Assembly (NCBI RefSeq): GCF_000150275.1
Contig: NW_002060946.1
Coordinates: forward strand, 1,574,202-1,638,201
Reading direction: 5' to 3'
Source of the DNA: Trichoplax adhaerens
Lineage: Eukaryota; Animalia; Placozoa
DNA: 64,000 nt
Shown: in pieces, positions 261 through 30,633 of the stretch
Layout of the letters: each line of letters opens with the position of its first letter
Position numbering within the stretch: the stretch's first letter is position 1
The notes under the pieces: model-generated
What the model was told of the DNA's origin: nothing
The model's input: the letters and a program-made list of their open reading frames with translations, nothing else
The model's database searches: none
Position numbers and translations under genes: made by a program

Positions 261-985
261 TTTCCACGAGAGTCCATATAGCCATTGATACATTTGACCA
301 TAAAGGCTACACTGATTGGGATGCTGATAATAATTGTCAGCATCTGCATATAGGGAACATACCAATCAATTGGCTCGCGCACCAGGCATTTATTAATATC
401 AACCACAAATTCTATATCATCTTCATTGCAGCATGAATAGATGACAGTAGTAGGATTAGCACCAATTTCTGCAGAATAATTCCTTCTGCAGATAGTACCA
501 CAAATTGACTTCGGAGGGCATAGACTTGGCAATCGAATAAATTTGGTTAAAGCAGTAAATATCAAATGGCGTCTACATTGTAATGGCAGCGCATTATAGC
601 AGCCTGGTTTTGTCTCGTTGAGGTTGATGGTGAAATTTTGCGTAAATACCGAGGGTAGACCTAATGTTGAACTCATATAGTTGCTTGATAAGGAGAAAAT
701 AGACTTGCCATCCCCTTTTCGAACCCATGCATAGATGATATTTTTCGATTTATTGTAAAGATTTTCGCGCCCGTTATATAAATCAAAGTAGATTACTCGT
801 GATGCCTTATGGGCAATGACTCGAATAAATTTTCGGTATGTTCTGAGCTCATTTGCGACTTTTAGTTGGCACTCACTGAAGCATTTGGTAATGTTGACGT
901 CGGTCGATGAAACTTGATGAACGATTGAAATCATCCAAATTAGACTTATCCACTTGGCAACGAAAGTGCCAGATACCAGAGCCAT
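261..985 (-). CDS. Orphan membrane-protein family copy A, coding exon 1 (signal peptide, Cys-rich ectodomain, TM helix); exon 2 lies beyond the left edge of the window
   Basis: 242-aa ORF homologous to the ORFs at 17.6, 24.1 and 29.9 kb (CQL.V.NE, RV..F.LY, YAWVRK..G, CGTICRR, YSCC, hydrophobic C-terminus). Ends in a phase-2 donor AA|GTAAGT at 261/260. Confidence 0.85.
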
Positions 986-3900
986 AGTAGGTAAAGTTTA
1001 TAATAATCGTTTCGTGAGGGAAAGTATAGTTGCCAAAGATGGACTTTTTAACTGCGTAAAAAAGTATCTACGGTGTATTTTATTGACCACAGTCACAAAA
1101 TTTCTCTATTCTTTAATCCGCGATTTCCTATCACTAATTAATGATTCCTAGTGAATCATTACTCTTAAATATTACGTTACCATATCAGAATTAGATATTA
1201 GGTAATTAAGATGTCTGTCCTAGGTACGTTAGTTACGGCAGTAATCAAGTTGTGATATTTTGTCATTCAAATCATTCCTTTGGCTAATAAAATGAGCCAA
1301 AGGCTCCTTTTTAATTTTTAGCGCTGATAATGGTTCATATCTAGCTGGCTAGTTACCCTATAAATTATAAGTAAATCCATAACGAAATATTTATGTCCGT
1401 TCTATCGAGGCAAATACAGTTCAAGAAACTATAATTATTCTCGCACAATTTACAGAGTAACAGTGAATCATCATTTTTATGATGATATAGTAGGAGAAAG
1501 CGGCAAGTTTCAAATACGGATTCTATCTCCGGAACAGATGATAGCATTATAAGATCAGCATTCATATTCTAAATAACCGGTTTTACTGTTACTTATCTGT
1601 GTTTTTAATTGCTTCTTGGTAGATTACCGTACAGTATGTTGTTGTTTGCTCAAATTTTGCTTTGGAAAGATTGGATTTATTAGGGACGTGCGATTATAGT
1701 TATAATATATTCTGATTAAGTTGCTGTAAATAAGATAATAAACTACCGCTGATTCCCGTGTAAACAACAATAAAGTCTCATCCCATATAAAATTTTATTT
1801 TGATTGTGCTTGCAGACTATATGGCAACTTTATAATTTAGAAATTTGTTCTACAACTCAATAGAATTTTATCCTTTTTCAAAATAAGATTCTGTCTTGAA
1901 ACAACGGAATGCTACATGAAAAACATATTTTCAGAGTTACTAACTTTGCTTTCTAGACTTGATATTTTTCCCCCAGTTATAGACTGAAAAATTTAGGCGC
2001 AAAGCAGAGAAAATTAATTTATTATTACTCTTGATAACTTGGCAATTTGACAAATTGAGTTCTTCTGATAAAAAATTATTTTATAATTGATTGAAGGCAT
2101 ATTTCTACAATAACTATTATAACTATTGCCAGCCCTTTAGCAGGGTATTGTTAATTCTTGATTAATACACAGTAGAGATTTATTCTCGATAATTAAGGTA
2201 GCGGAAAATTGAATCCCAATTAGGATTCATAACTAGATCATCTCGTATGTTGGTATAGACAATTGCAATATTCTCTTCACCAGTACGAATAGGCTAGTAT
2301 TTTTTTGACGCTATATCTTATGATCTTATGATTGATAGCATAAAATTTGTCAATCAGGATATTTATTATCTGACAGACATATTATTATTTTTTAATTATC
2401 TATGGTCATTCTCTATGGTTCATTAGGTGCAGATATCAAGCCTACTATCATCATGAAAATAAGAGTTTAGTGGTAAAAATATTCCTTCAAATCGGACGTG
2501 CCGTACATGTCTGTCTTGTACACCAAGTACTCTAATGTTAATTATCTGGGCCGCTAGTATGTCATAATGCGTAGCTTTTTATATTATCGAGTAAGATATT
2601 TTATCTCCTCTAGGCCTAGCACTGCTCGATATTGTTCTGCATTTCCAGAAAGTTAATTATTATCAATTACCTTTAAGTTGGCTTTCAGTTATTAATAAAT
2701 CACCAGGTGGGAGATTTAAGATTGATTATAATCATGTATTCTATATTTTCGTAGAACTATTTAAACAAATTATAATTATTGATATCCCTAATGAAGGATT
2801 TTTTATCACGTTAAATCTGATAGAATCAATAGTATTCTTGTATTTAAATTTACTCTAATTGTCGCAAAACGAACATCTATCCAAACCTTACGCTATATTT
2901 ATATAAAGCAGCTACAAAATATGATGTCGACTTTCCTTAGAATTACGAAAATAAAATCTGTTCATCGTATATAATGATAGTTAACGCTGATGTAATGGCT
3001 TACACCAGTATTAATGATCAAGATTTAGATAAGGTTCTTTATGTAGTTCAATTGCCTTAAATTAGCTATTTTTCCTTGTGTATTCCTTCATTAAATAGAC
3101 AATATATAAGGCTAGTGAAGGCTAAGATAATGAACCTAGGAAGGTTAAGGAATTTTGGTTGGTTTTGGTCTTATTACTTGCTGATAACATATTCGGTTTG
3201 GGTTAATTTATGGCTCTGTTATTCGTTGGTAGCTTCTAGCTTTTCTACCTGAATAGACTGGTTAAGTTGGCAGATTTACAAGTATTATCATAAATTTCTA
3301 TAACTCAATATACATTAATTAACCTATGAATTGGCTTGGAACTAATCTAAATTTTATATAAATTAGTAAATTAAGCTTCGAATTAGCGTGTGGTATGTGT
3401 TATCATTAATTTCTATCACTCAACACGAATTTATCAATAAATAAACTAATCTAAATTTTATAGAAAATGTGTTACAATAAGCTTTGAATTAGAGAGCGAT
3501 ATCATTAATTTATTATACAAGCTTACAAAAAGCCTGGGCCAACATCAACGGGATATTTACGCGAGGAAGAAATATAGGAAGATACAAATTAAAGGGCTTT
3601 AATTTTAGATCGATGTATGATAAATAAATTTAGTCTTAGAAACAGTACAGTACTTTTTTAGGTAAGTTATCCAAATCTCACGCAATCGTTACAGAAGTAA
3701 ACATAAATTAATTTAAATATCGCATCCGCTTTTCTGAATATTAAGAAGTATAAACACGTACGTTAAAATCAAGTTTACTGAGCTGAATATCTTATGAAGT
3801 AAATCAGGCTTGATTATTTATAAATAATCATCAATTTGATTATTAAAATACCTAGAAAAATTCGTAAAACAAGCATCGAAAAGTTATTTCTGTAAGCTTC

Positions 3901-4790
3901 GCTTCTATTATATAACGAAGGAAGGAAGGATAGACACGCCGATATTTCCCATATTAGCTACTACTGTACTATTATTAAAATATCCTAACGGTAAGCAAAC
4001 ACCGTAGCAGAAGCCCACATACACTAATAATAAAAATTAAAATTAATATAAAAATGAATGCAAACATAATAAATTGCACAGGATTACTTTACCAGATAAA
4101 TAAATTTATTTTATTTTTAGCTACACCTCTGGACAAGTTTTATAAACACAAAATTATCTGAAAATAATTTGCACAAACACGAATCGAAATTTATCTGTAT
4201 GAATTTAGATATATCTGTGTAAACGAAAGTATATCTAAAAATTAAAATATTCATTGCTGGCAAGTATAGAACATGAATTTCACGAATAAAATTAGAAAGT
4301 TATGAAACAAGCAGCACCGGTTCTAGCTGTCATTTAATATATGATACTCGGCATAGTATACAGAAAGATAGCATGAAATGAACAACACAATTATATTTGC
4401 TTCGACATGCAAGTGCATCCTGAATAAATTATTCATACAACTTTTTAGCCTATTAAAAGAGATCCATAGATTTAAGCCTATGTGTATACATCTTAGTGTT
4501 TAGGTAGCAATTAATTATTCTTTAAAATTATTTCGTTGTTAAACTTCTATCTGATCTATATAAACATCGATACTATTGTAAAGCCTGCCTCTTATTTATT
4601 AATTAATGGGTAGTGTTCTATTAGAAATGGAGCTTTGTAATTATCATTGTAGTACTGTAATAAACATAACGGGTGAATACGAATGANNNNNNNNNNNNNN
4701 NNNNNNNNNNNNNNNNNNNNNNNNNNNNNNNNNNNNNNNNNNNNNNNNNNNNNNNNNNNNNNNNNNNNNNNNNNNNNNNNNNNNNNNNNN

Positions 4791-5300
4791 AACGATAGCC
4801 TCTTCTATATTGTATTAAACTTGCCATCAATACTTCAGTTGTCGTTTCTTCATCAGGTTCGTTTACTTTAAGATATCTCATAGATAATATCGTAGCGATA
4901 TAAACTATTGGTGTACTAGCAATAGTTGCATTTAACGATATAAATGACCATTTGTTCGAATCCAATAAAACTGTAAATATAAACGTAACAAGTAAACATG
5001 TAGTAATTATAATATTATATAAAATTTGCCAAAGATTCAACGATACTTCAGGAGCATAGTATCGTATATAATCGAATAGTTCTGAAGGTATTCCAATACA
5101 CTCACAATCATCGATGTTATTTATTTTGTAATAGACTCGACTTAACTTAACTCGATAGTATTCGATCTTTTCATCACTTAAGTGTTGACTAATGCATGCT
5201 AGCAATTCATTTAATCCATCATTGTATCCATGATAGTAATAGATATTATAATCGGGCGATAATGTTACTTGGACAGAATCGTCGACAGTATCATCGTGTA
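4791..5300 (-). pseudogene. 5'-truncated fragment of coding exon 2 of the orphan membrane-protein family; 3' end lost in the N gap
   Basis: Encodes VTLSPDYN...GIPSELFDYIRYYAPEVSLNLW...WSFISL...YRRGYR, matching the C-terminal third of the paralogues. Homology stops near 5300 and no upstream part was found. Confidence 0.75.
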
Positions 5301-5374
5301 GTGATGCTCCCATATTTGATTATACGGATAGCTATATTTGATATAGTCAGGTTGCTTTGGATAGATACTAGTAT

Positions 5375-5541
5375 AAACTCCCGTCGCTATGCTGAAGGAT
5401 TACGTTGTTATAATATTACGAACTCCCGTCGCTTTGCTGATGGATTACATTCTTATAATATTATACTTCTAGATTATTATTTTACAATAATACTTTAAAC
5501 GTAACTCGGCCTTGCATCGCTACGCTGATGGATTACGTTCT
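5375..5541. repeat. Three imperfect copies of a ~30-bp motif (aactcccgtcgct(a/t)tgctga(a/t)ggattac)
   Basis: Copies near 5376, 5421 and 5503-5540. Confidence 0.7.
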
Positions 5542-5616
5542 ATATACTGTACGTTAACGTTACAAAATACATTACTGTTACTATTCAGGAATTTGATTTT
5601 ACCAAATTTCATTAAT

Positions 5617-5790
5617 ATTCATTCACGTTAAAAATGATGATTTGAACAGCAAAATGCATTGCATGAAGACAATACAAGTAATGAGCTGTTTATTAACATC
5701 CATTCACGTTAAAAGTGATGATTTGAACAGTATGTATAATGCATTACATGAAGACAATAAAAGTAATGAGCCATTTACTCTCTTAACAAC
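5617..5790. repeat. ~80-bp tandem duplication
   Basis: cattcacgttaaaa.tgatgatttgaacag...catgaagacaata.aagtaatgagc occurs twice (~5620 and ~5701). Confidence 0.7.
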
Positions 5791-6298
5791 AAGAAAATTT
5801 ATATTACGATTATTATTTTCAGTCAAATTAATGCGAGCGATGTAGAAAATATCATATCTATGACAGTATTCCAGTGCCATCGTAAATAACTATAATAATC
5901 ATAATTACTATTAGACTCACGTACAGCAACATGGAGTAGTTTTAATGATATTATATCGCTGTAAATGTATATATATTATACAATTTTAAATCCAAGCAAA
6001 CGCAGAAGCACTAGATTATACCTTCAATCACTAGCAATATTGACATATGATTAGATGACGAAAAGATATTTGACTATATATAGTTTATCATAAGTATATG
6101 CATATTGCGAATACAATTACCGTATAATAATCTATTAATAATAATTGGATTCGATATTATATTGTTCCCTATGTAGTAACTTTACCAGCTTCCCGTAGCG
6201 AGACTCTTCGCTTCCATTTATAAATGTTTATTTACGCCTGCAATAATGCAACGCTGAGTAATGGAATAAAATCTATACACATTTTATCTATAGCAACT

Positions 6299-8364
6299 TT
6301 AGAATCTTAAAGGTCGAGTTGTAGCTATTCCTTCATTTTCACGAACTTCTTTAGCTATACTTGAGTAAGCGTCAAAACGGTCTAAACTTCGTTTCGTTAT
6401 TGCTTCTGCTAAATTTTGTTCAACTCTATCACAACCCTAACATGATCAATAAATTATTTTGTTATTCAAGCTCAAATAAAGTAACAACTAAAAGTTATTA
6501 CCAGTTAATATTATATGCAAACCTCTTCAATAAATGTAGACGCCAATAGTCTTTCATGATCTGCGGTCGGTAATTTACTACTGATTGCTTTACTTGCTCT
6601 AGATAAAACTGCAGCCATGGAGTAAATGTCAATTGTAGCATTAGCTATGCGGTTTAATATAAACTGCTGATCGATGATATCGCGACCATGTTTAAGTAGT
6701 AACTTTTCTATCGTAGCACCAAATTCTTCAACGCGTTGTGTAATCATCTTAGCACAATCGCTAAGTTCAGGTGCAGTTACTTCGAGTAGCGCTTGACTGT
6801 CAGCTATGCCTATAAGACGTTTCGATCGTTTAACACCTTGATCCCATAATGTACCCAAATTGGAGATTGGCTGTTGTAACGCTTTCTGTAGTTCTTTCAT
6901 ATTCTTTCCAGCATACTGAATACCATTTAAGGCAATAAATAGGCGTAAAATATCGTTGGTACCTTCAAATATACGACAAATTCGTATATCTCTCATGAAA
7001 CGTTCTACTTGATTTTCTCTCATGAATCCCATACCGGCTAATATTTGTATGCATTCGTCGCATACATTCCAAGCTGATTCAGAACCGAATATTTTACTGA
7101 TAGCAGCTTCAACTTGGAATTCTTTAATACCTCTATCCATGTTATTGCTAACAGCATAGGTGACCGATTCGACAGCGTAATGAGAGAGACCCATTTGAGC
7201 AATTTTTTCTTGTATCGATTGATATTGGATTAAATGTTGGCCAAATTGAACTCGATTATTGGCATGTTCGATTGTCTTAGCGGTGAACATCCTCATTGCA
7301 CCAGTCATGGCGGCGCCCATAGCATATCGACCTTCATTGAGTATGTGCATAGCTACTTTGAAACCCTCTCCGACTTTACCTATCACGTTCTCGACCGGTA
7401 TCTTCACATTATCGAAATAGACTGCAGCCGTATTGGATGATCTTACTCCCATCTTTTTCTCAGGAGGACCGCTAGTCACACCGCCGAAATCTCTCTCTAC
7501 TATAAAAGCTGTCACTGCTTGAGATTGTTGATCGGAATCGTCCTTCTTGAAAGGAACTTGAGCGAATACAGTCATAACATCGGCTATACCACCATTGCTA
7601 ATCCATATTTTGCTGCCATTCAATATATAATGCTTGCCATCGTCATCAAGGACAGCTTTGCTAAGAATAGAATTGGCATCCGATCCAGCTGAGGGTTCGG
7701 TTAAACAGAATGCAGCAATTTTCTCACCAGTTACTAAACTTGGCAGATACTTTTGTTTTTGTTGCTCGTTACCGAAGAGTACGATGCCTTTATAACCGAT
7801 GGCTTGATGACCGCCCAGGAATACAGAAATGGATGCATCAAAGGATCCGATGATTTCAGTTATTCGTGCATATTGTGTTCTCTTTAATTGCATCCCACCA
7901 TATTCTTGCGGAGCTAGCATACCAAGGGCACCAAGCTCTTTCAGTACTTCTATTGATTTCTTGGGCAATTTTTCATCCAGATCACATTGTGATGCATCAT
8001 GTACTTCACGAAAATATTTCTCAAAAGGATCAATCATTAATTTGACAGTATCTTTGGATTCATCATCTAATGCATCAGGGTAAGGGAATAGCTGTGGTGT
8101 ATTGACCTTGCCACAATATAGCCCTAAAGCAAATGAATCATCTCTATCACGGTTTGATGATGGCTGTTCTGATAGAAGGCGTACACGATTGATTGTCATA
8201 GCATGATGATCAATTTTAATGTTATGATAACAGTAGCGTCCAATTCTAGCAGTGGAATTCACAATAAATCGAAATTGAGACATGGCTGTCGCCATTAACC
8301 ATCGATTCTGTCTGTACTGTACTGTAATCATTCTCATCGTAAGTGCTGGAGCGGTTGTGCGCAT
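6299..8364 (-). CDS. ACADVL: Very-long-chain acyl-CoA dehydrogenase (VLCAD/ACAD9 clade), mitochondrial; exons 8364-6523 and 6436-6299
   Basis: ACAD motifs AFCLTEPSAGSD, LNGSKIWISNGG, GPPEKKMGVR, RVQFG, RIFEGTNDILRLFIAL, plus the VLCAD C-terminal extension. GAG|GTTTGC donor and TTAG|GGT acceptor (86-bp intron) add a final exon GCDRVEQNL...TTRPLRF*. Basic N-terminus is compatible with a mitochondrial presequence; the true start Met is uncertain. Confidence 0.92.
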
Positions 8365-8589
8365 ACGCCCGCCAGCAACTGTTGCCTATTTGTTTTCAAT
8401 TTGTTAGCCATGACAGCAGTCTATCGGCTTGAAAATAACATGTAGTAATGGATAATGCATACAGTATTTTTTGACCTCTTTCAGCTATAGTAAGACGATA
8501 ATAGTATGGTATCAATTAGTATGAATTAAGATACTTTAAAGCACTAGAGGAAAGTAGATGGAGCATGTGATGGCATCTGTCAATAAAGT

Positions 8590-9093: not shown

Positions 9094-9740
9094 CTAGTAT
9101 TTGGAAACACATTTTGCAAATTTAGACAGCTCAAAAAATTTCCAATACATCTTGTTACCAGGAACAGGTTCATTTGTTTGCACAACCATTGGTACGACAT
9201 CGATTTCAAATAAATTTTGATCTACCAGTGCTGTGTTACCCGCGAAGATGTTATTTTTGCTGATGACAATAATATATATTTGAAGTACACTTTTGTGGTA
9301 TTTTTTTTCACCTCCTTCTGTTACCTGTCCCGTCCCGAGATTAATTTACTCATGTATACTTGTTGACGGGCTAAAAAGTAATCTTTCTTTTGCTCTTGCA
9401 TTTCAATTGCTATTTTTTGTTTCCCTTTATTTGTACATAAGATATCAATATTATATCTTATACTTGATTGTCTTTTGTTACCAGAATAATGCACTGTTTG
9501 TAGTTGGCCAGAAATGATCTCGACCTGCATAATTTCTTGATCATCTTTGAATCCTAATAAGCTATTCCATAAACTAATTAACATCTTCCTTCCTACGTTC
9601 ACCAAATAATATTCGAAGGCTAAATCATCCTTTAGATCGGTAAAAACTCTCGTGTCCAAATTTTTTTGAATCAGCTCTATTCTCGCTCTTTTACGATCCA
9701 CAACCACGTAGAATTTTACACCATCAATTAGATAGCTCAT
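9094..9740 (-). pseudogene. Bacterial-type Rpn / PD-(D/E)XK nuclease-family putative transposase, frameshifted
   Basis: Motifs DLKDDLAF, LISLWNSLLG, DILCTN...IAIEMQ...FLARQQVYMSKL. A 5-bp duplication (tcccg x2, 9328-9337) shifts the frame. Removing it gives SGQVTEGGEKKYHKSVLQIYIIVISK...MYWKFFELSKF, matching the Rpn F.ELPKF motif. Confidence 0.75.
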
Positions 9741-11111: not shown

Positions 11112-13260
11112 CTAAGCTATCACAAAGGAGTCTAATAACTGGTTATAACTTCTTCGATGATGACGACTACGATAATGAAAAGCCGTTCTTACCATTTGAG
11201 TAATCGGCTGAAATTCATTATCTCTTCTACAGTACGATCGATAACCTCTTCGATACTGAACTAAAGCTGACAATAATATTTCTTTGCCTGTTTCTTCTTC
11301 GGTTTCAGTTATTTTAAGATATCTCAAGGAAAAGCTTGTGACGATAAAAGCTATTGATGTATTAGCAATTGCCGCATTCAATGATGCAAATGACCAATCG
11401 CTGGAATCTATCTAGTACGACTCTTAATAGAAATATCGCAAAAACACCAGTAGTGATGCTAATATTAAAGAAAATTTTCCAAAGATTCAACGATATTTTG
11501 GGTGTATGGTATCGTAGATAATCGAATAATTCTGATGGAATGCCGACACATTCGATACTTTCGATATTAGCAATCTCGTAGTAGACTTGACTTAACTTTG
11601 CATGAAAATCTTCTACTTTATTAATCTGTAAATATTGGCTGATACATGTTAATAATTAATTTAATGCATCGCTGTCTACTTTTTATAGGTAATTGTCATA
11701 ATCTTTATGTAATGTGACTTTCACAGTATCATTATCCAGTGTAACATATCGAAATATGACTTTCGATATTCCGTTTATAAATTCATAATTATTTTGCAAC
11801 AAAAGTTGTCGAAAGTAATGTTGAATATGTTGTTTTAATTGATAATCTTGTAACATTTCGGGTAAATCTATTATTATTATAGGATTATGAATATTATCGG
11901 AAACGACGAAATTGACTTCTAATGTTTCTTGCTTAGCGGCTTATATTTGGTCAATTTGTGATTATACATTTTTTCGTGATTGGACAATACGTTCAGGAAG
12001 CTTTTCTTCCTTTCTTATATAAGAATCGATCGTATTTGTAACCTAGTGTATGTAGGGCAAAAAACAACAATTACAAAACTAAAATGAACAGAATAGGCGA
12101 AAAGAAATGTTGCTACATTAATTATGATACGGAATATCAATTGAAATGTTGACCAAAGCTGGATTATGGTAATTATAGAATAAAATAATGCGATGCAGAA
12201 TAAAATGGGTATCAAAATATAATTAATATATTTAAATTTAGGATTTATAAATAAGAATTGACGATTTAGTGTGATTGTTAGAAGTTTACATAGAAATAAT
12301 AGAATTCGTAGAAGTTCCAGAGCCCCGAAAATAAAAAAGGCAAAGAAATTATTAACGTAAGTAGGCTCTTAATAGATTTTAAGAAGTTTCAAGATTTTAA
12401 ATGATTCGTAAGATCTCTTACATAATTTATAAACCGTGGATTTAGTTGCCCGAAGTTCATTTTAGTTAAGATTTTGTAATTTAATGTCGACAGAGAATGA
12501 TACCGATGTTGATATTGCAACGAGTTAGTTCGCCAGGATTGTCTTACACGAGCTAGCATTATTATTAATGTTAAAATAAGATGACTAACCAAAATACGAT
12601 AAAAGTCATACTTAATTTTTGATGGCAATCTTCGAATAGATGTGATAATTGACAAATAGGGTAATAGTTATAGTGTGATGGAAATGAATAATTCCAAAGA
12701 TCCAATAAAAATCAAGATACACATAAATTTCGTTTAACACCATTCAGCTAGAGATTACCATGCTCACTTTCTCCAAGACAGAAATATTCAATTGTTTGTA
12801 ATCTCAGCTTACTCATAACAGAAATGCTGACTGTATCAATTTCCGTTACCCTACAAGAGAAATATAAAAGATATTGCGGGTAAAAAGGAATACCATTGGC
12901 TAATCAACACCGAATAGATGCAGCAATATCATGTAAGCATGCAATAGACTATATTGCTGCGATATAAACTAAATAACTGATAAAGCAAGAAGTATTTTAT
13001 AATTTCACAAGCCTTAACGCTAATTTACCATTTCAATATCACGCATGTTCTAATGAGTTCTGCAACGTTACCTCGCTGACTTTTCTAAACAGATATTGAT
13101 GACTTTTACCAGTGTTACTGCAGCCAATGCAGTACTTAAAATAAGGGTAAATATCCTCAGGTATAGTATGCACTATCCGCTATTTGCAGGGTTTAAACAC
13201 GAACTAACATTGATCTTAGAATTGGATTCTTCCTTTTCACAACATGAAATGTTCCCGCGA
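11112..13260 (-). pseudogene. Disabled copy of the orphan membrane-protein family (exon 2 at 12850-11112; 3' remnant of exon 1 at ~13260-13081)
   Basis: Acceptor TTGTAG|GGTAACGGAAATTGAT (VTEIDTVSIS) at 12850, followed by stops and frameshifts; retains IDLPEMLQD, GIPSELFDYLRY and YRRGYR. The exon-1 remnant reads SCCEKEE...CLNP..*...LRIFTLILSTALAAVTLVKVINICLEK with a degenerate donor AA|GTCAGC. Confidence 0.85.
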
Positions 13261-14667
13261 GAGATATAAAACCCAATTTTATCCATACGTTGTACAAAGC
13301 TGCGCTTATTTCTTCTGAAGAGGGTTGGACAGGCTGGTCTATAGCAGCTGTTATTGTTGTATATTAGCAGTGTTCATTAATACGATTCAGAGGATTGATA
13401 TCACTGCTTGATATCTTTTAGATACAGAACATTAGTCCTGCACCCTTTATAAAAACTTTGTGTTCGTGACTATTTCTTTCAAGTAAGCTTATTAACAGGA
13501 TAAAGTATACGCCTTCTATACTGTTAAGGTGTCCAATTCGAACTTATTCATATCATTCCAATTATCTATGTGAAACAGGCATGGTTGCTATAAATATTGG
13601 AACTTCACCAGCTTAGTACCGTGTCCAATTTGTGTTTGTAGTTATTTCTACCAAACGAACTTGTTGTACGCCTATATGGTATACGCCTATATTGATAGGG
13701 AGTTCATTTGTGTTTATCTTAAGATACCCATTAACTATTTGAAACATACGAATAGATGATTTCTTAGGCTTAATCACTTCATTTATTGGCAGAAAATTGA
13801 GCTAACCTAAATCAACAATATGCAACTAAAAATACATGTAAAAAATAAACAGAAATTTGCCCAACTATTTAAAGAGACTTCAAGTACTCAATATCTCATA
13901 TGTTTCAACAATTTTGAACGAATTCTGACATTTTTATTGTATGTAAAGAAGGCTTACAAATGACAGAAATACTGATTTCAATTAGTTTCTCCGCCATACC
14001 ATTACTTAATTTACTTCAATGCTAGTATAGATGTGGAATAAATAAGTTTATAGCCCCTAAGATTCAAAATTCGATAAATTTTAAGCTATTAAAATTAGGG
14101 CTAATCCTTAATGTGATATCCAAGTTATCTAAAATTAAACTTTAAAGGTTGATCATCTCGGAAGATAAGCAGAAAATCTTAGTACTTAGGTGGAATAATA
14201 GCCGCTAGTCGTGTAGTTTAAACTATTGAAACCACTGTAGTGCTTGGGTTTTACAATCCCTTAGGTTCGTAATCGTCTAGCTCAAAATCTGAGTTATTAA
14301 AATTGAGCAAATCTCTAACATGATAAAAGATTACTTCTAAATGCTACCGTACTTCAGTTACTACTGTAATTAGCTGAACTACTACAACCATTAAGTTATC
14401 CATAATGAACATTTAGGGTTGACCATCTCGGAAGATAAGCAAAAAATCATAGTACTAAGATGGAATGATCGCACCTAATCCAGTAATTTAGTGCTGATTT
14501 ACGATTTTTTGAACGATGCATTGAATAGTTGAAAAACAATCTACAATATTCCATCGCATTAATGATTGGCTAGACACATTTGTTTAATACATGTACAGGA
14601 TATCTTCTAACCAATTAGTATAGACATACCAAATTAAAATCTATAAGTTCGGAATACTGATGAATGT

Positions 14668-17600
14668 TTAACTGACGCTCTTATATCCCAATAAATCAGA
14701 ATTTCGTCGAGGATTAGGATTAGTATAGAATATCTGCATTATTTGTGAAAGAGGCTGAAATTCAATACCTCTTCTACAAAATAATCGATAGCCTCTTCTG
14801 TATAATATTAAATTAGCTAATAACATTTCTTTTGTTATTTCTTCATCAGACTCGGCTACTTTAAGATATTTCAAAGATAGAACTGTAGCGATATAGACGA
14901 TTGGCGTATTGGCAATAGTTGAGCTTAACGATGTAAATGACCAACATTTTGAGTCATATAATACTGCCAAAATAAATGCCAAAAATATGCATGTCGTAAC
15001 CATGATGTTAAAGAAAATTTGCCACAGACTCAACGATACTTCAGGTGCGTAATATCGTAAATAGCCAAATAATTCTGATGGAATTCCAATGCATTGACTA
15101 TCACCGATATTATGGATCTTGTAATAGACTTTACTTAACTTTGCTTGAAAGTATCCTGCTTTCTTACTTTGTAGATGTTGACTAATGCATGTTAATAACC
15201 CGGTTAGATTGGCGTTATCCGTGAAAAATAGACAGTGATTGTAGTCTTCAGGCAATGTTACATCGACATCAGTATCATTATCATTTATACTGTATTGAAA
15301 TACAATTCTACATATTCCATCAGATAATCCATAACCAGTTTGTAACAAAATCTGTTGTAAATATTGTCGTACATGTTGTTCTATTCTATCGTCTTGTAAC
15401 ATTTCCGGTAAATCGATTGTTATTATATGATTATCAATACTACCAGAGATGAAGAAATAGACTTCTAACTTTCCTTGTTTAGCAGTTAAGATATCATCAA
15501 TTCGTGATTCTACCTTTTGCTGTAAATGGATGATATACCTAGGAAGCATATTTCCCTTCTTTTTATAAGAGTCAATCAGTTTCATAATATAATGTACATA
15601 AGGTATCACGACGACAATAGTAATGCTAAAATAAACAGAATGGGCGACGATAAAAGTTGTTACATTAATAATGGTACGGAAAATGACTTGGAAAAAAAGC
15701 CAAAATTCGGCTATCGTAAAAACAGAATATGTTAGAGCTACGAGAGATAAGATAGCAGACATAATAGAATTAAGATGACGATGTTTAGAATGTGTAAAGA
15801 GAAAGTTACGTTTCAATTTAATTGCAAGCACTTCAGAGATAAATAATGTTATTCGTAAAAGTTCGATAGCACCGAAAATAAAGAAAGGTAAACAAATTAT
15901 AAATGTCAAGAAGCTTTTGATAAATTTTATCACATGGAAAGATCTCAAATCATTTATTATGTCTTTAATACGAATTGTAAGTTGAAAGTGCAACTGGCTA
16001 TAATTACTTCGCATTAAGATTTTATAATTGAGTGTAGTTAGAGAAGCTCGTTTTAGTTGATACGCTAACGAATTGGTTAACCAAAATTCTTTTAGGTGAG
16101 CCGCAATTATGATTATTGTAAACAATCCATGTAAGATACCAACACCAAAATACCTGAACACTATTGGCTTGGGCACTGATAGATGACCGATGAAGGGAAA
16201 AACCATGAAAATAGGTGGATAGATCTGTGCTACAACAGATGCATATCCTCCAAAAGCAGCAAGAAAGAACAAAACGATATGCATCAGGACATGTTCTATT
16301 TGTACCCAACGATTGCTAATTGTACTTTCTCGAAGATAAAAGTATCCGGCTGTCTGCAACTTTAACCGGTTTATAATAGAAACGCTTACTGAATCAATTT
16401 CCGCTTTTCTATAGTGCAAAGACATAAATTTGCTATTAAGAGCAGAGATTTCGCACTTTAAAATCACACCATCAGTTACCATCAAGTTAATACTTTTACG
16501 AATTTTCTGTTATGTGCAGCACTAAAAACTAAGTATTACCTGAAACTGTAAATTATACTTTTAGACTGTATATCTAGACCGAAATTTGATCTAAATAGAT
16601 GCAGATATCGCCTTTGGATCTTTAATAGCTAAATGCTAGTTAAAGAACACTTTTCCAAAAATTCTAAATACCATCAAAGAACCACTAAAACTAACTTAAA
16701 TACCATAGCTTTAGCCATAATATACAATTGTTATAGGATATTCTCGATCAGTTCTTAACTAGCAAATTGCTTGTAAAGTGAGTATCATTAGTTTATGATC
16801 ACCGCTTTAACGCTTTAAAATGCAATATTGTAGTTATCTTGAATATCAAATGTTTAGTTAAGCTATAGGTTCCTTCTTGTGACTTTACGGTATATAACTT
16901 CATATGGATTGTGGTAAGGTAATTTTAATAAGGAAATTAGCAAGCAAGTAATTGAGGTGAAAGGAAAAATAGGGTCCAACTAGTGAAAAAGAAGTCATAT
17001 AAATAGTATAAGATGCAAATTCACATTGTATAAGAAGATAGAGTGAGACTCTATCATGTAGAAAGTAGGAGTTATATTGAAAGAATTATATAATTATAAA
17101 AAAAAAAGAACTGTAAAGGAAATATAATATCTATGCTAAATATTCTAAATTGATAGCGAGTAGGATAGAAATAAAATATAAGGTATTGACTAGAAGTTAT
17201 TCACAAATGTGTTTACGAAATTGCAGTAGACAAGGAAAGATCTTCAAATTTTTAGTAGTGGAATTGTGTAGAAGCGAGAAGGTTGTATGCTAGTAACTAT
17301 TAATTGAATTATCAAAAGAAAATGACAGGCTAAGAACCAATCTTAATATTGAATTTGCTTTAAAAGCTATACATGGAGATTACTGTACTCTATTCAAGAA
17401 TATTGTTTAGTCTGGTACTTTATTACACAGTGATAGACTTAAAAATTAAACGGTAAAGTTCTACAGAGTGATTTGACTCCATCAGAAATGAAATTGTGTT
17501 GCATCTTTTAACAGTTGTAGAAGTTTTAAACAAGAACTTGCTGTCAACTCTATTTGCTACGAGTTCTGTGTGATTATTGTACAGAAAAGAAGCATGTTTA

Positions 17601-18389
17601 TCACATACACTATAAAAATTATTGATGTTATAGTACTTACTTTTCTAAGGAATCGATATACATATTAACCACCCTAGTCAAAGCTATTCCTGCCAATGTA
17701 GTACTTAGGATGATAGTAAATATTCTCATTAGTGGCGCATACCAAAGTATTTTTTGAGGGGTTAGACATTTATCAAAATTGATATCATCACTAAGGTCTT
17801 CATTTTCGCAGCATGAGTAATCTACGCTACTAATAGAATTTCCTTGGATAGTAAAATTTCTTCTACATAGAGTACCATAAGGTATCTCCGAAAAATTCTG
17901 GTTCTTTTTCAAATTTAAATGAAATACTTTGCTCAGAACTTTAAATATAGTTAATCCTCGACATAAATCAGTGGTGATGTTACTGTAACAGTCAGTACTA
18001 GCTTCTGTGATATTAATTCGCAATTCCGATGAGAAGATCGCATAAATACTCAAGCTTGTAGTAATATAATCAGTAGGTAATGCGAAAATAGCTTCTCCAA
18101 CATCTTTTCTTAACCATGCATAAAAAATAGGGCTTTCATGGACTGAACTTCGAAGATGGTCATTGCCATTTCTTTTATAAAGATGAAAAAATACAACTCG
18201 AACCGATGGAGATTTAATAATCTTCCTGAAATCATGATATATTCGAGTTTCATTTAGTACGCTCAATTGACAATTGGAATGGCACTCAGTCTCCACCCTT
18301 TCCAATACTACAAGGTGGAAGGATATAAACAGCCAGAAGATCGATACGCAAGTGAACATGGACAAATTATGCATAGACAGAGCCATCAT
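14668..18389 (-). CDS. Orphan membrane-protein family copy B, 2 coding exons (18389-17641, 16408-14668), ~829 aa
   Basis: Donor AA|GTAAGT at 17641 and acceptor CTATAG|A at 16408 are both phase 2 and join in frame (SLEK-KAEIDSV). The CDS totals 2490 nt. Confidence 0.88.
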
Positions 18390-21290: not shown

Positions 21291-21470
21291 TTATATTGAA
21301 TATTTGTAAGATGTTTTGAAGATTCTCTTTAATTGTATAAAAGGATGGAATTCAATTCCTCGGGAACAGAAAAATCGATAACCTCGGCTATATGGAACTA
21401 TGTTAGTCAGTACGACCTTATGAGCTTTTTTTGGCTGAGCTTCAGATATAGTTCAATATTTTAAGGCTGT
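21291..21470 (-). pseudogene. Short relic of the C-terminus of the orphan family
   Basis: Translates to LKY*TISEAQPKKAHKVVLTNIVPYSRGYRFFCSRGIEFHPFIQLKRIF, closest to the end of copy C (YRRGYRFFCTRGIEFHPFLQLKSMF). Confidence 0.8.
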
Positions 21471-21879
21471 CTTCGTCGCTAAAAAAAACGATAGGCATAT
21501 AAGCTATGGCTTCATGAATTGAAGTAATCATGGCTAGGTTATTTCATTATATTTTTTATATTCATTATATACTCATTTATTTATTATATTTATTAACATT
21601 ATATTATATATTTTGTTATACTTTATTTGTTTTCTCACTTCACAATAGCTTACAGCCTTACACGCTGCTCTACCGTAACTACGACATTGTACGCAATTAT
21701 AGTCTTCAATAATAGTATCCTTTTCTACTAAAATCCTAGTGCATTTCTCTACATGGCAGTTAAATCTGCTGCCATTGACTTATCGAATCCTTTATCACAC
21801 TTAAAATTGTAAAAGAATATGCCAGAGAATGCCGATGCATCACAATTATTTTCACGTACCATAACAGCTTAGGTTCAAG

Positions 21880-24849
21880 CTAGAAATTGGCTACATTTAT
21901 CTTTGCTTGCGCCTGATTAGCTTCAATATCTACGCCTGCACTGCTGGGATATGTTGTAAACATACTCTTTAGTTGTAAAAACGGATGAAATTCGATTCCT
22001 CGGGTACAAAAAAATCGATAACCTCGACGATATCGAACGATATTATTCACTAGGATTTTATCAATCATTTCTTGCTTGATTTCAGCTATAGTTAAATATT
22101 TCCGGGCAATGGTCGTTGTCACATAGATAATGGGTGCATTAGCAACTGCAGAGCTGATTGAGAATACCGTTGGTGAATCTGAATCAACTACAACGGTTAA
22201 TATAAATGTGATAAATAAACCAGTTGTGATAGTAATATTGAAAAATACTCGAGGTAAACTAAGAGATATTTCAGGTGCATAGTACCGCAGATAAGAGAAC
22301 AATTTTGCCGGGATTCCGGTACAGACAAGATCATCAATATCATCCATTTGGTAATAAATTTTAGTTAAATTATTACGAAATTCTTGTTCAGTTAAACCTT
22401 TCAAGTGAATACCGACGTCTTGAGCCAGTTTTTGTAATTTGTTGCTCTTACGATGGCAAGAGAGATAATTATTATTGCACTGGGGCAAAGTTATCAGCAT
22501 TGTCGTACTTGACGTTTTTTCGTACTGAAATATAACTTTAGATATTCCGTGTGCTAAGACGATTGTGCCATCTCTTATTAGTTCCTCTAACGTATCCTGA
22601 ATTTTTTTCTGAATACAATCATCTTTCAACATTTCCGGCACATCAATAATGACATTATCAGTGATAGCATTATCATCCAATTTAAAATAGACTTCTAATT
22701 TGCCTTCGGTTTGTTCAAGTAGCTCGTCAATTTCTTTCTCAACTCTGTCATGTACTTGGATAATTCGTTGTGGTAGCATATGACCTTTGCTATCATACGC
22801 CTCCATAGCCTTAATAACGTAGTGAAAGTAAGGAACGACAATAACTGTTATTACGCTAAAGTAAATGGAATGGGCAATAACAAATTCTGCCACGGTAATA
22901 ACAATGCGAATAATGAGTTGAGTTAATAACCACATTCCCAAAATTGTCAGTGACGAATACAGCAATGAAATAATGAAGAAAAAAGACGATAATAATCGAT
23001 ATCCGATTGTCTTTGAAGCAGTTGACAGAAAGCTACATCTTAAATGTAATGTTAACGTATCTGTAATAAATAATATAATGCGTATAATTTCGATTCTAGC
23101 CATAATAGCAAATGGCAATATTATTAGAAATGACAATATCGCCTGCATCATAGCGGTATAACGATGTAACTTTCGGTACCGTATTATATCTTTGATGCAA
23201 TTTTTAAATTGAAAATGTAACTGGCGATGGCTGTTTTCAGTAAAGAACTTGAACGATAAAATTGTAACTTCATCCTGCTGCTGCGATAGATATGGATAAT
23301 ACTGGCCAAAAAATTGCTGGATGTGCGGGAAGAGAACAAAAAATGTACAAGTGGCATAAATACCAAGGGCGATGTAACTAGCCAAGGAAGCACGATCGGG
23401 TATCTTCCTATTGCGAATGCCAGGATAAATTAAAATAGAATGTGGATAAGCTTGTACTAGAATAGATAAAGTAGATCCACCGGATGCAATTGCTGATACA
23501 GCAATGAACTGACAGCAAAACCAAAGTTGTACCCAAAGACTATTTTTTACCAATTTCCGTAAATAAAAATACCCAATAGGATGAAATCTTAGTGATGTTA
23601 GGATACGAATTTTCTGACCGTCAACTTCAGTTGTTCTGCAGCAAAATAAAATGAAAAAGAGAGTCAATAAGAGCAACTGGAACTTTATTATAAAAATTTA
23701 CAATTAGATTACTTTGCTGAACATTATCATGAGAGAACTTGCCGGATTATCAAACTGATTGACAAATACAGCAGTTTAAATTAATTAGTTACAGTTGTAA
23801 AAACCTTTCGATATTCGTATTATATCTTCAACAGTACTGAGCAAATATACTGTTAGAAGGTTGAAATGACATGGTCATCAATGGAGTAAGATACGAATAA
23901 ATTAAAAAGTCAAAGTATACTCATGTATGAAAATGAAATTTACTATAGTTGTAATCTGTCAAGATAGTGACGATAGAGTAGACTAAGATTTAATTAATTT
24001 CGAAAGAGCGATTGAAACTATAGCTTGTATTATGAAATTAAATGATAATTTATTCACCTTCGTATTTACTGTAATTAAATCTTTTTTAATTTATATCCAT
24101 TTATTTTATCTATCAGATTAGACTTACTTTCCTAAAGCGTTCATGACTCTATTGATAATCTTAACCAGTAATGCTCCGCTAATCGGAATACTGATGATAG
24201 CTGTAATTATATTCATAGCTTTGACATACGGTTTGACTGATCTAGGCTCTAAGCATTTCTTAGTATCTACTTCCAATTCTATAGTATCGTCATCACAACA
24301 GGAATAATAGGTAGAACTAGAGTTGTCATCGATTTCCGAATTAAAATCCCTCCTACACACAGTACCGCAATTTTTAGCAGTGCAATTGTGCATCGTTAGC
24401 AATCGAACAAACTTTGCTAAGGTAAAGAAAATAATGTGCCGTTTACATTCCAGAGATGATGCATCGTAGCAGCTTTGGTTAACTTCTTTGAGATAGATGG
24501 TTAAATTGGAGGTAAAAATTGACGTTAAACTCAAAGTGGTGCTCATGTAATCCGTAGGCAAGGCGAAAATTGCTTCGCCAACATCTTTTCTAATCCATGC
24601 ATAGAAGATATTCTGTGCCGAATTATAAAGACTATTATTTCCTTTTTGCAGGTGGAAATAAACCACACGGATTGATGAAACTCTGACAATTCTACTAAAA
24701 TTGAGGTAGGACTGTGCCTCGTTTTCAACTTGTAGCTGACATTCCTTCACACATTTCTTGGGGTCTTCGTCGATAGTGGAAACTTGATTAAAAGTTGAGA
24801 TAATCCAAAATAGTGTTATCCAATAGAATCTAAAAAGAAAGTATGCCAT
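21880..24849 (-). CDS. Orphan membrane-protein family copy C, 2 coding exons (24849-24128, 23635-21880), ~825 aa
   Basis: Donor AA|GTAAGT at 24128 and acceptor CTGCAG|A at 23635 are phase 2 and in frame (ALGK-TTEVDG). All family motifs are present. Confidence 0.88.
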
Positions 24850-27637: not shown

Positions 27638-30633
27638 TCAGATATTCTTGCCGGTAAGTGCAATTTTCACTAGTTTAGACAAAGGTTTATATTCGAGACC
27701 TCTTGTACAGAATAACCTATAGCCTCTTCTATAGTGTATCAGATTAGCTAATAGTATTTCAGATGTTTCTTTCTCGGTTGCTAGAGGAATTTTGAAGTAT
27801 CTTAGTGTTAGAGTAGTACCAATGAATAGGATAGGTGTGTTAGCAGCAGCAGTAGTCAATGATGTGAAAGACCAGGAATGAGAATGAAGCAATAGCGTTA
27901 AAAGAAATGTCAGAAATAATCCTGTAATAATCAGGAAGTTTACGACAACTGACCATAAGTTAAGGGACACTGTAGGAGCGTAATACCGTAAATAATGAAA
28001 AAGCTCTAACGGAATCCCAGAATAACGCGCACTATTGATCCTTGTAATGTCATAAAATGTTTTCACTAATCTTTCACGATGGGTGTCGATAGAGGTATTT
28101 TGTAAGTGTGCACTAATCTCTGTCAATAAATTATCTTTACCTTCACTATTAGCACACAGAATAGGATAGTTCTCATTTTCAGGTAGTGTTACCTCAATAA
28201 TTGTATTGCCATCTCTTCTATAATTTAGGACCATCTGGGACATTCCAACATTGATTTCAAATCTATGGTCTTCAACAAGACGTCGTATATAGTTTTGAAT
28301 TGTAATTTCGATTACAGTTCCTTTTAACATTTCCGGTACATCAACTTCTATAGCATTATTACTACCAACTAAGAAATCAATTATTAACTTTCCATTTTCT
28401 GCATTGAGTATCTTATCAACTTCCTGCTCCACGGCTGAGTCTAACTTCATAATAAGTAGTGGTAGTGAGTGTAATTTTTCTGTATAATCATCCAAGTAGG
28501 CAATTACGACATACAAATACGGAATAATCACAACAATAGCGACACTAAAGTAGACGGAATAAGTTATAATAAATGTTGTTACAGTAATGATAATACGAAA
28601 GAAGGCTTGAAAAATAATCCAAAATTGGAATACTGTTATAACAGAATAGCAGAAAGCTATCAAAAATAAAACTGGTGCCAGAATGCAATTCAGTACTTTC
28701 AATTTGGAGTTGATAGGGAGAAGATGATATTTTAAGCGCAATGTCAATACCTCCGTTAAAAATATCACAATGGGGATGACAGTGCTTGATTTAGTTAAAA
28801 AAAATGGTAGATAGACCAAAACTTGTATTAAATTATTGAAGAATACCACTATCTTCAATGATAATAAATTTTTCGTCAAATCCGTTATCATATTCTTAAA
28901 TTGTAAATTTGTTCGCCCAGCGCTCATTGGCGCTAAATATCTATCTTGAGGTAAAAGTCTGCTTCTATCTTGCCTTTCAGGTTGATGAAGGCAAATTAAT
29001 TGCTTTAGGTGTGTTATTATAATGATTATGGTAGCAAATAAATGTAATATACCAGCAGGCACGGTAGCAGCTGTTATAGAAGGCGGTATAGCAACACCGT
29101 AAATTTCTGGAACAATCATAAACGCTGATGGATAGATTTGCATCACCAAGGCTGCATAACCGAATGCAGTTAGCGCGAGCCATAAGATTAAATAGAAGAA
29201 GCAGTAATAGGCATGTTTCCAACATGCTCTAGTTGAGCTACCTTGAACGTAGAAGTATTCGATAGTCTCTAGCCGTAAAGTGTTCAAAATATGGATATGA
29301 ACAGAATCCATTTTAAAATTTCTAGGAAGGAATAGATCCAACCGAACATAAAATAGGAGATAAAAAGCGAATTAGCTGTTATGGTATGCGCCAAAAATAC
29401 TCTAGAACATGATTGTGAAATAACTACAGCACATATCGAAAATTATTCATTCCTACTTTTGCACTTAAATATAAAGATATGGCAGAATCAACAATTCTAT
29501 ATGATACTTGCTTAATTTGAGATGTTGTCATGATTTTAAATTCAAAACATTCAAATCTTTCCGTTGCTAAGTTAATATTTAATAGCTGTGCAGTAAAGTG
29601 AAAAAGACAGTACGGCTCTATCCTGTCGCCTCAATATTAACAGAAAGTAATACTGGACTAGCTCAATTTCGCTCCTTTCTATATTGCTTGCTTAATCTAT
29701 AACGACTACGTCATCATTTAATGATAAAAAAATAAATTTGAAATCGCTACTATTAAGAATTTTTATTCATTCCAATTAAAAGTATTTCTATTGGTAATTA
29801 AAATAGTGTCGATAAGGTAATAAGACAGACTTTAATATTTATTAGAGCTGAGGCTATTAATTATCACGTTACTGTTAGAATCATTTTCCTTTCGTTTACC
29901 TCTCCAATGTACCCATGTACATATTGAAAATTTTAACTAACAGAGCGGCACCCATTGGGATGGTAAGAAAAATAATGAGGAATTTCAGGAATGGCGCATA
30001 CCATTTCACTTCTTCAAGAAGTAGACATCGTTGAACATCTACAGGTAATCCTGGAAAATCTAAATCACAACATGAATATCGAACTTCTTCATGAGCAGTT
30101 CTTTCGGTAGCCATGAAACTTCTTCTGCATATATTACCGCAATACCTTCCGGTACAGTTGTTGGTTAATCGAGTAAAATTAATTAATGTTTTGAATAAAA
30201 TAATCGGTTTACTCGGTAGGACCGTCGCGTTTTTAAAGCATCCCTTAGTTGATTCTACCAGTTTAATTTTCATACTTGATGTAAAAACTGTGTAAATACT
30301 AAGGCCAGTGGTTATATAATAAGATGGCAAAGTAAAAATGGCCTCACCCTGATCTTGTTTTACCCACGCATAGAAAACTCCATGCTCTATGAATTGAAGG
30401 TGTTGATCCCCAATGTAAATCTTGAAAAATAGGACCTGATTCCACGATAACCTCGTTGCTTTAACAAAGTTCGCATAGGCTATGGTCTCGTTAACAACGG
30501 TAAGTTGGCAACGAGACTCAGATCTTGCAGCAATGGGCTGCAAAAATAGTGCAAAGCAGATGAGAATAAGCATCTGCCTTACGGCTATCCATTGGATAGG
30601 CGATCGGTGATTGCTAGAGCACTCAAATACCAT
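27638..30633 (-). CDS. Orphan membrane-protein family copy D, 2 coding exons (30633-29900, 29321-27638), ~805 aa
   Basis: Donor AG|GTAAAC at 29900 and acceptor CCTAG|A at 29321 are phase 2 and in frame (TLER-NFKMDSV). An acceptor TATCAG| 2 nt before the ATG suggests a 5'-UTR intron. Confidence 0.87.

What the first reader, a model, noticed from the sequence alone, without database searches (positions are those of the whole stretch)
261..30633. Tandem array of an uncharacterised two-module receptor/channel-like gene family
Seen: the alternating ~245-aa and ~600-aa ORFs are two exons of one gene, joined in all three complete copies by a phase-2 intron just after the first TM helix. The ~805-830-aa product has a signal peptide, an N-glycosylation-site-rich ectodomain with a fixed Cys scaffold (CQL.V.NE...YAW..K..G..IF.L...C...CRR.F...YSCC...CL), several TM helices, a ~190-aa soluble loop (ID.PEML; GIP..LF.YLRYYAP), two more hydrophobic helices and a near-invariant YRRGYR.FC.RG.E..P tail. 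At least seven co-oriented copies or relics are present, and paralogues are strongly diverged between these motifs. I recognise no named domain. Inference: a lineage-expanded sensory, immune or recognition receptor family, or a ligand-gated channel family, evolving by birth and death.
Basis: partly seen in the sequence, partly recalled or inferred. Interest (0 to 1): 0.82.

Follow-up and report, generated by a model that had tools for sequence, protein, structure and literature searches.

The report
Placozoan two-exon membrane glycoprotein family
This stretch of the Trichoplax adhaerens genome holds a tandem array of real, selection-maintained genes for about 820-residue nine-helix membrane glycoproteins that match no characterised family or solved fold, so what they do is still unknown.

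Summary
The window is Trichoplax adhaerens scaffold C1411. On its minus strand lie three complete two-exon genes (A, B, C), exon 1 of a fourth (E, whose exon 2 lies just outside the window), a 3' fragment around the assembly gap (D), one decayed pseudogene (F) and two tail relics.

The phase-2 GT..AG intron is present in A, B and C and is conserved across about 20 paralogues in the genome. Public JGI models TRIADDRAFT_55304, 55302 and 55301 already join the exons the same way. I found no RNA evidence.

Exon 1 encodes a signal peptide, a glycosylated eight-Cys ectodomain (Pfam DUF8415) and TM1. This module is also found in about 800-residue single-ORF coral proteins. Exon 2 encodes eight more helices, a roughly 175-residue cytoplasmic alpha/beta domain and the YRRGYR tail, and was found only in placozoan-type sequences.

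A confident AlphaFold model (pLDDT 83.5) and a model of the cytoplasmic domain alone (pLDDT 89.4) match nothing significant in the PDB. dN/dS of 0.2-0.5 shows purifying selection, which is looser on the ectodomain in young duplicates.

A receptor or channel role is plausible but untested. The family is uncharacterised rather than undiscovered. This scan had not noted it elsewhere.

The parts
29900..30633 (-). Gene A exon 1: signal peptide, DUF8415-type Cys-rich ectodomain and TM1. It ends 2 nt into a codon, before GTAAAC.
29322..29899 (-). Gene A intron (578 nt, GT..AG, phase 2)
27638..29321 (-). Gene A exon 2: 8 TM helices, cytoplasmic alpha/beta domain, YRRGYR tail and stop
24128..24849 (-). 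Gene B exon 1
23636..24127 (-). Gene B intron (492 nt, phase 2)
21880..23635 (-). Gene B exon 2. Its first ATG is at ORF residue 183, so it cannot be a stand-alone gene.
17641..18386 (-). Gene C exon 1 (residues 1-249 of TRIADDRAFT_55304)
16409..17640 (-). Gene C intron (1232 nt, phase 2)
14668..16408 (-). Gene C exon 2 (residues 250-828 of TRIADDRAFT_55304). The cytoplasmic domain at 15034-15570 was folded alone.
261..985 (-). Gene E exon 1 (TRIADDRAFT_55302). Its exon 2 lies outside the window at C1411:1571980-1573734.
4035..5283 (-). Fragment D: a 1.25-kb duplicate of the last ~160 codons plus 3' flank of gene G, interrupted by the assembly gap at 4687-4790
11136..13352 (-). Pseudogene F: exon-2 relic at 11136-12852 with frameshifts and stops, and exon-1 relic at 13083-13352
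21309..21488 (-). Relic of a C-terminal tail (~60 codons), about 400 nt downstream of gene B
31951..32332 (-).

Best explanation
These are functional, tandemly duplicated two-exon genes of a placozoan-expanded family. There are about 22-24 copies in T. adhaerens. This array holds five intact genes, three of them wholly inside the window.

Each gene encodes an N-out, C-in glycoprotein with nine TM helices. Exon 1 supplies a cleavable signal peptide, a disulphide-braced, N-glycosylated ectodomain of about 175 aa (Pfam DUF8415) and TM1. Exon 2 supplies:
- a short cytoplasmic beta-hairpin;
- eight further TM helices, including two tight helical hairpins with conserved polar or charged residues (E and K in TM4', Q and R in TM5, S/Y/P in TM6);
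- a cytoplasmic alpha/beta domain of about 175 aa carrying the near-invariant D-x-P-E-M-L and G-I-P..Y motifs;
- a basic YRRGYR..RG.E..P tail.

Inferred, not shown: the protein sits at the cell surface or in the secretory pathway. Its ectodomain binds an external ligand, and the conserved membrane and cytoplasmic part transduces the signal. That would make it a multi-pass sensor or receptor family diversifying by birth and death. The ectodomain-TM1 exon is an older module shared with cnidarian multi-pass proteins. In placozoans it is joined to a different membrane body.
For: Gene structure:
- Conserved phase-2 donor and acceptor.
- The two ORF types are always paired in the same order and orientation.
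- 11 of 20 exon-2 ORFs have no usable ATG.
- The public model P0219 has the identical junction.

Functionality: dN/dS is 0.12-0.58 in all exon-2 regions, TM1 is noisier at 36 codons (0.17-0.83), and the ectodomain is higher (0.72-0.98) in three of the four youngest pairs.

Architecture:
- Hydropathy.
- AlphaFold2 full-length model, pLDDT 83.5 and pTM 0.78.
- Sequons enriched threefold and 8 conserved Cys in the ectodomain.
- K/R-rich loops flank the soluble domain and tail.

Module history:
- hhalign of the placozoan profile against the coral profile matches only the ectodomain plus TM1: probability 97.6%, E 4e-12.
- The coral family has 475 proteins, including Pocillopora verrucosa LOC131796076, and two relatives of it that I looked up are encoded as single ORFs.
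- The precomputed Pfam hit PF28478/DUF8415 falls on the exon-1 product.
Against: - I found no transcript, expression, localisation or ligand data.
- The Trichoplax sp. H2 annotation splits the orthologue of gene C into two genes.
- Divergence is similar in all domains. The classic receptor pattern of a variable sensor on a fixed transducer is weak.
- The conserved polar TM residues and the large cytoplasmic domain fit a channel, transporter or enzyme equally well.
- The ectodomain and the TM core were not folded and searched on their own.
Confidence: 0.45

Rival explanations
1. The proteins are ion channels or transporters. The polar-lined TM4/4' and TM5/6 hairpins would form a conduction or translocation path, probably in an oligomer. 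The cytoplasmic domain would gate it, and the ectodomain would modulate it or bind a ligand.
For: Conserved E/K, Q/R and S/Y/P residues inside TM helices, and long helices that extend into the cytoplasm. The most conserved parts are TM7-8 plus the tail (52% pairwise identity).
Against: Nothing resembles a known channel or transporter by Pfam, PDB sequence profile or fold. The RND hits have probability 0.13 or less and TM-score about 0.08. The oligomeric state was not tested.
Confidence: 0.22
2. The proteins are housekeeping or secretory-pathway membrane proteins, for example a cargo, lipid or glycan handler. They would not be sensory, and their copy number would have drifted upward by tandem duplication.
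For: Purifying selection is uniform across domains. A conserved, non-expanded relative exists in the same genome (TRIADDRAFT_51889) and in corals.
Against: About 22-24 strongly diverged paralogues with pseudogenes and relics is unusual for a housekeeping function. Omega in the ectodomain rises to 0.7-0.98 in three of the four youngest pairs.
Confidence: 0.15
3. The ~245-aa and ~600-aa ORFs are separate genes, as in the Trichoplax sp. H2 models TrispH2_001802 and TrispH2_001801, and are not spliced together.
For: The H2 annotation splits this copy. In 9 of 20 exon-2 ORFs an ATG lies before the conserved body. No RNA evidence was obtained.
Against: The ORF-1 stop is the TAA inside a GTAAG donor in 17-18 of 19 paralogues. 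An in-phase acceptor is present in 19 of 20. 11 of 20 exon-2 ORFs lack a start codon. The two cnidarian-type homologues looked up carry the ectodomain and the multi-TM body in one ORF. The joined protein folds confidently.
Confidence: 0.05
4. The array is decaying or non-functional DNA, such as dead duplicates or material derived from a mobile element.
For: One pseudogene, one fragment and two relics lie in the window. A PD-(D/E)XK transposase-like ORF lies nearby.
Against: Long intact ORFs, conserved splice signals and dN/dS well below 1 at dS 0.4-1.5. Orthologues are 99-100% identical between T. adhaerens and Trichoplax sp. H2.
Confidence: 0.03

Closest known systems
Pfam PF28478 (DUF8415) proteins of corals, e.g. 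Pocillopora verrucosa LOC131796076 (uncharacterised, ~800 aa)
   Same: They share a homologous N-terminal module: signal peptide, Cys-rich glycosylated ectodomain and TM1 (hhalign probability 97.6%, E 4e-12). That module is followed by a multi-pass membrane body. Overall length is similar.
   Different: The two relatives looked up (P0090, P0074) are single-ORF genes. No homology was detectable after TM1. They lack the ~175-aa cytoplasmic alpha/beta domain, the D-x-P-E-M-L and G-I-P motifs and the YRRGYR tail. Instead they carry a long linker and an invariant CxxC with a downstream near-invariant His pair.
TRIADDRAFT_51889 / TrispH2_003207 (the other Trichoplax DUF8415 protein I found)
   Same: It shares the DUF8415 ectodomain (hhalign probability 87% to the array family) and is multi-pass.
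   Different: It is closer to the coral type: probability 99.7% over the ectodomain, TM1, the linker and the next TM. It has no detectable exon-2-type body, and the only relatives found for it are other placozoans' orthologues.
Sterol-sensing-domain / RND-type membrane proteins (UniRef labels the paralogue TRIADDRAFT_60553 'SSD domain-containing protein')
   Same: Both have a large extracytoplasmic domain followed by a bundle of TM helices. RND pumps are the top, though insignificant, Foldseek rows.
   Different: There is no Pfam SSD, Patched or RND match even at E up to 10. Foldseek probability is 0.13 or less, TM-score about 0.08 and rmsd above 20 A. The helix count and the position of the domains differ.
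MHC class I-like alpha1-alpha2 platform (EPCR, ULBP, RAE-1)
   Same: The cytoplasmic domain is built as two beta-hairpin-plus-helix units, and these folds are its top-ranked rows.

Membership tests
Pfam PF28478 (DUF8415) | Match of the N-terminal ectodomain to the family profile | tested here: met
   Precomputed Pfam hits fall on paralogues and orthologues: P0002 and P0004, P0002 in its locus, and the exon-1-only product P0218 of gene C's orthologue, marked weak. hhalign to the coral DUF8415 family gives probability 97.6%. The model itself is absent from the local Pfam copy, so I could not rescore the window ORFs directly.
Coral-type full-length DUF8415 membrane proteins | Homology over the whole length, including the multi-TM body | tested here: not met
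   The profile-profile alignment stops at TM1. BLASTP finds only the ectodomain.
Sterol-sensing domain / RND superfamily | Pfam SSD, Patched or RND profile match, or the RND fold | tested here: not met
   No Pfam hit at E up to 10 for P0215, P0219, P0213 or P0217. Foldseek RND rows have probability 0.13 or less and TM-score 0.08.
Known ligand-gated or sensory channel families (Cys-loop, iGluR, P2X, DEG/ENaC, TRP, 7TM ion-channel receptors) | Sequence-profile or fold similarity to any of them | tested here: not met
   Pfam gave nothing. PDB sequence profiles gave nothing. Foldseek and VIA gave no row above background. The TM core was not searched as an isolated model.
GPCRs (7TM receptors) | Seven-helix bundle with a Pfam 7tm profile | tested here: not met
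   Nine helices, no 7tm Pfam match and no significant GPCR fold match.
MHC-like platform fold (cytoplasmic domain only) | Significant structural superposition | tested here: inconclusive

The most novel reading that the evidence does not exclude
The family is a previously unrecognised class of animal surface receptor or receptor-channel with new folds. It would pair an ancient cnidarian-placozoan ectodomain module with a placozoan-only 8-TM body and cytoplasmic domain. Placozoans, which have no nerves, would use it for chemical, microbial or self/non-self recognition.
Probability: 0.2. Interest if true: 0.8.

Novelty: categorically new. Interest (0 to 1): 0.5.

Why it matters
Placozoans sense food, microbes and each other without neurons, and the receptors they use are largely unknown. 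This family has about 22-24 members, is under purifying selection, and encodes glycosylated nine-helix proteins that matched nothing in the fold searches I could run. Its sensor module is shared with corals. That makes it a concrete candidate for a new receptor or channel class, and an example of a membrane protein apparently assembled by exon-level module exchange.

Tried and rejected
Searches that gave nothing:
- Pfam hmmscan of all exon products and of public full-length paralogues.
- PDB sequence-profile searches with three alignments.
- ESM Atlas by features and by structure. The Atlas's own models are poor, pLDDT 0.35-0.37; one call failed.

Literature and expression:
- No paper mentions DUF8415 or nine TRIADDRAFT gene ids.
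- The supplements of two placozoan cell-atlas papers do not contain the ids.
- Exact-product look-ups for full-length models returned only genome records and no RNA-derived contig.

Other checks:
- A homologue search from TRIADDRAFT_51889 found only placozoan orthologues.
- The scan's earlier notes hold nothing on this family.
- The UniRef 'SSD domain' label was rejected because I could not reproduce it.

Left out:
- By rule, I did not build or search my own joined exon 1 + exon 2 sequences for genes A and B, and I did not search for a spliced-junction string. Full-length work used the public proteins P0008, P0213 and P0219 instead.
- I did not run complex prediction, because the report makes no binding claim.
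Full report
IDENTITY OF THE WINDOW
The window is G000:C1411:1574202-1638201 of a 105.6-Mb assembly in 1414 contigs. The public T. adhaerens proteins TRIADDRAFT_55304 and TRIADDRAFT_55302 occur letter for letter in its ORFs. It is therefore Trichoplax adhaerens. GC content is about 30-37%.

THE OBSERVATION
ORF listing and tblastn of the ORFs against the window show that every family element is on the minus strand.

- Three genes are complete: A (30633-29900 and 29321-27638), B (24849-24128 and 23635-21880) and C (18386-17641 and 16408-14668).
- Exon 1 of a fourth gene, E, lies at 985-261. Its exon 2 is just beyond the window start (L008 7681-9435). The product is TRIADDRAFT_55302, orthologous to TrispH2_011857.
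- F (11136-13352) is a pseudogene with at least four frame changes and at least nine stops.
- Two short C-terminal relics lie at 21309-21488 and 31951-32332.
- D (4035-5283) is a 3' fragment, described next.

THE ASSEMBLY GAP
Window 4035-4685 aligns to L008 389-1016 (92.7% identity). Window 4791-5283 aligns to L008 1232-1724 (98.6%). Both sides of the gap are therefore collinear with the 3' end and downstream flank of the neighbouring gene G (TRIADDRAFT_55301). The gap replaces about 215 nt, not the nominal 104, and this stretch includes the last codons and the stop. Fragment D begins abruptly at residue ~625 of the protein and has no upstream exons. It is either a truncated segmental duplicate or an assembly duplicate. 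The reading frame across the N run cannot be known.

SPLICING
In A, B and C, exon 1 ends AG|GTAAAC or AA|GTAAGT, and exon 2 begins after a pyrimidine tract and AG|A. This gives a phase-2 junction two residues after TM1.

I fetched the other family clusters from the genome and checked the same signals family-wide:
- In 17-18 of 19 paralogues the stop that closes the exon-1 ORF is the TAA or TGA inside a G|TAAG/G|TGAG donor.
- 19 of 20 have an in-phase AG just before the conserved start of the exon-2 body.
- 11 of 20 exon-2 ORFs have no ATG before that body. In B and E the first ATG is at ORF residue 183 and 153 respectively.

The public model P0219 consists of 249 residues from exon 1 and 579 from exon 2, joined exactly where I placed the junction.

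Against this, the Trichoplax sp. H2 annotation splits the same gene into TrispH2_001802 and TrispH2_001801. I also found no RNA-derived contig. Splicing is therefore strongly inferred but not observed. Full-length analyses used public proteins.

SIZE AND DISTRIBUTION OF THE FAMILY
Six-frame searches of the genome find about 24 exon-1 matches and 34 exon-2 matches, some of them pieces of one copy, in four clusters:
- C1411 at 1.565-1.606 Mb (this array);
- C1399 at 369-428 kb;
- C1397 at 929-939 kb;
- C1411 at 2.04-2.19 Mb.

In each cluster the two ORF types are paired in the same order and orientation.

A profile search of 1.84 billion representative proteins found only 86 hits. Those with an exon-2-type body are Trichoplax proteins or come from unnamed short contigs. 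One such sample, ERZ27263980, holds both close and distant copies, as a placozoan genome would.

Hits to the ectodomain alone lead to a family of 475 proteins of about 800 aa. One is named: Pocillopora verrucosa LOC131796076. The two relatives I looked up are encoded as single ORFs on large eukaryotic contigs.

Profile-profile comparison shows that homology between the placozoan and coral families covers only the ectodomain plus TM1, which is exactly exon 1 (probability 97.6%, E 4e-12). The precomputed Pfam label for this module is PF28478, DUF8415. That model is missing from the local Pfam copy, which is why direct scans were blank.

Trichoplax also has a DUF8415 protein outside these arrays, TRIADDRAFT_51889, which is nearer the coral type.

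STRUCTURE
AlphaFold2 on TrispH2_011857 (the orthologue of gene E) with an 89-sequence alignment gave pLDDT 83.5 and pTM 0.78. In order along the chain the model shows:
- a signal helix;
- a mixed alpha/beta ectodomain (residues ~30-205);
- TM1 (209-240);
- a beta-hairpin;
- TM2 and TM3;
- a cytoplasmic helix;
- two tight helical hairpins (398-441 and 450-533);
- an alpha/beta domain (~548-695);
- TM7 and TM8;
- three C-terminal helices.

Counting helices gives nine TM segments, with the N terminus outside and the C terminus inside. This agrees with two other observations. Sequons and eight conserved Cys concentrate in the ectodomain. K/R-rich sequence flanks the soluble domain and the tail.

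Fold searches gave nothing above background:

'No known fold' is therefore shown only for the cytoplasmic domain, and provisionally for the whole protein.

SELECTION
Mean pairwise identity among the five genes of this array is similar in every region:

| Region | Identity |
|---|---|
| Ectodomain | 39% |
| TM core | 37% |
| Cytoplasmic domain | 40% |
| TM7-8 plus tail | 52% |

Nei-Gojobori dN/dS is 0.12-0.58 in the exon-2 regions of all pairs with a usable dS. That indicates purifying selection and therefore function. TM1 is only 36 codons and is noisier (0.17-0.83). The ectodomain has a higher omega in three of the four youngest pairs (0.72-0.98 against 0.3-0.5 elsewhere, at dS of 0.5 or less). 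The difference is milder in pair C-G (0.36 against 0.22-0.24). This fits relaxed or diversifying selection on the exposed module, but it is not proof of positive selection.

WHAT THE PROTEIN LIKELY DOES
Shown: the membrane glycoprotein architecture, the conserved gene structure, the selection pattern and the module history.

Inferred: a surface sensor or receptor in which the DUF8415 ectodomain binds something outside the cell, and the conserved membrane and cytoplasmic part (D-x-P-E-M-L, G-I-P..Y..Y, YRRGYR) passes the signal on. I give this 0.45.

The conserved polar and charged residues within the TM hairpins keep a channel or transporter reading alive (0.22). A non-sensory secretory-pathway role is also possible (0.15).

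COMPARISON WITH KNOWN FAMILIES
The only family membership that holds is DUF8415, itself uncharacterised, and only for exon 1. The UniRef 'SSD domain' label on the paralogue TRIADDRAFT_60553 could not be reproduced. No paper in the searchable library mentions the family or its gene ids.

VERDICT
The feature is real and functional, and its function is uncharacterised. It is already present in public annotation as predicted proteins. It matches nothing characterised in any search I could run. Interest is moderate (0.5). It would be high if a sensory or channel function were demonstrated.

Noticed in passing
window 6511-8364 (-): A 617-aa uninterrupted ORF with the full ACAD9/VLCAD domain set (Acyl-CoA_dh_N, M and 1, plus ACAD9-ACADV_C; E down to 1e-41) sits inside the array between fragment D and pseudogene F. 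The ORF ends without an obvious C-terminal extension and may continue in a further exon.
   Followed up: no
window 9321-9740 (-): A 139-aa ORF matches the bacterial-type PD-(D/E)XK transposase/Rpn family (PF12784, E 5.5e-11). It is only the N-terminal part of the profile. It was also noted separately by the scan (s1-760869).
   Followed up: partly
window 4687-4790 and 4035-5283: The nominal 104-N gap corresponds to about 215 nt in the parental copy. Fragment D is 98.6% identical to gene G on the coding side of the gap but 92.7% on the flank side. It could be a recent segmental duplicate or an assembly artefact.
   Followed up: partly
L010 3024-5955 (-) and L011 6496-9457 (+) (C1399:369-383 kb): Two family genes in inverted orientation are nearly identical (dS about 0.03, with the cytoplasmic domain identical). 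This is a very recent inverted duplication or gene conversion.
   Followed up: partly
Trichoplax sp. H2 models: The annotations disagree. H2 splits the orthologue of gene C into TrispH2_001802 (249 aa) and TrispH2_001801 (604 aa). TrispH2_008793 (2462 aa) is about three times the family's usual length and probably fuses neighbouring family genes.
   Followed up: partly
alignment A4 (coral DUF8415 proteins): The coral family has an invariant CxxC followed by two near-invariant His in a cytoplasmic loop (P0127 C436, C439, H453, H472). This may be a zinc site. It is absent from the placozoan array family.
   Followed up: no
L001, L002, L027, L028 (ENA ERZ27263980, ERZ23499115; Logan SRR30664516): Exon-2-type ORFs 24-42% identical to the window genes occur on short contigs of environmental or other sequencing runs. 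They presumably come from other placozoan lineages. The source organisms were not identified.
   Followed up: partly
window 5376-5463 and 5611-5771: Two short tandem repeats (45-nt and 81-nt units, about 2 copies each) lie immediately upstream of the 5' breakpoint of fragment D.
   Followed up: no
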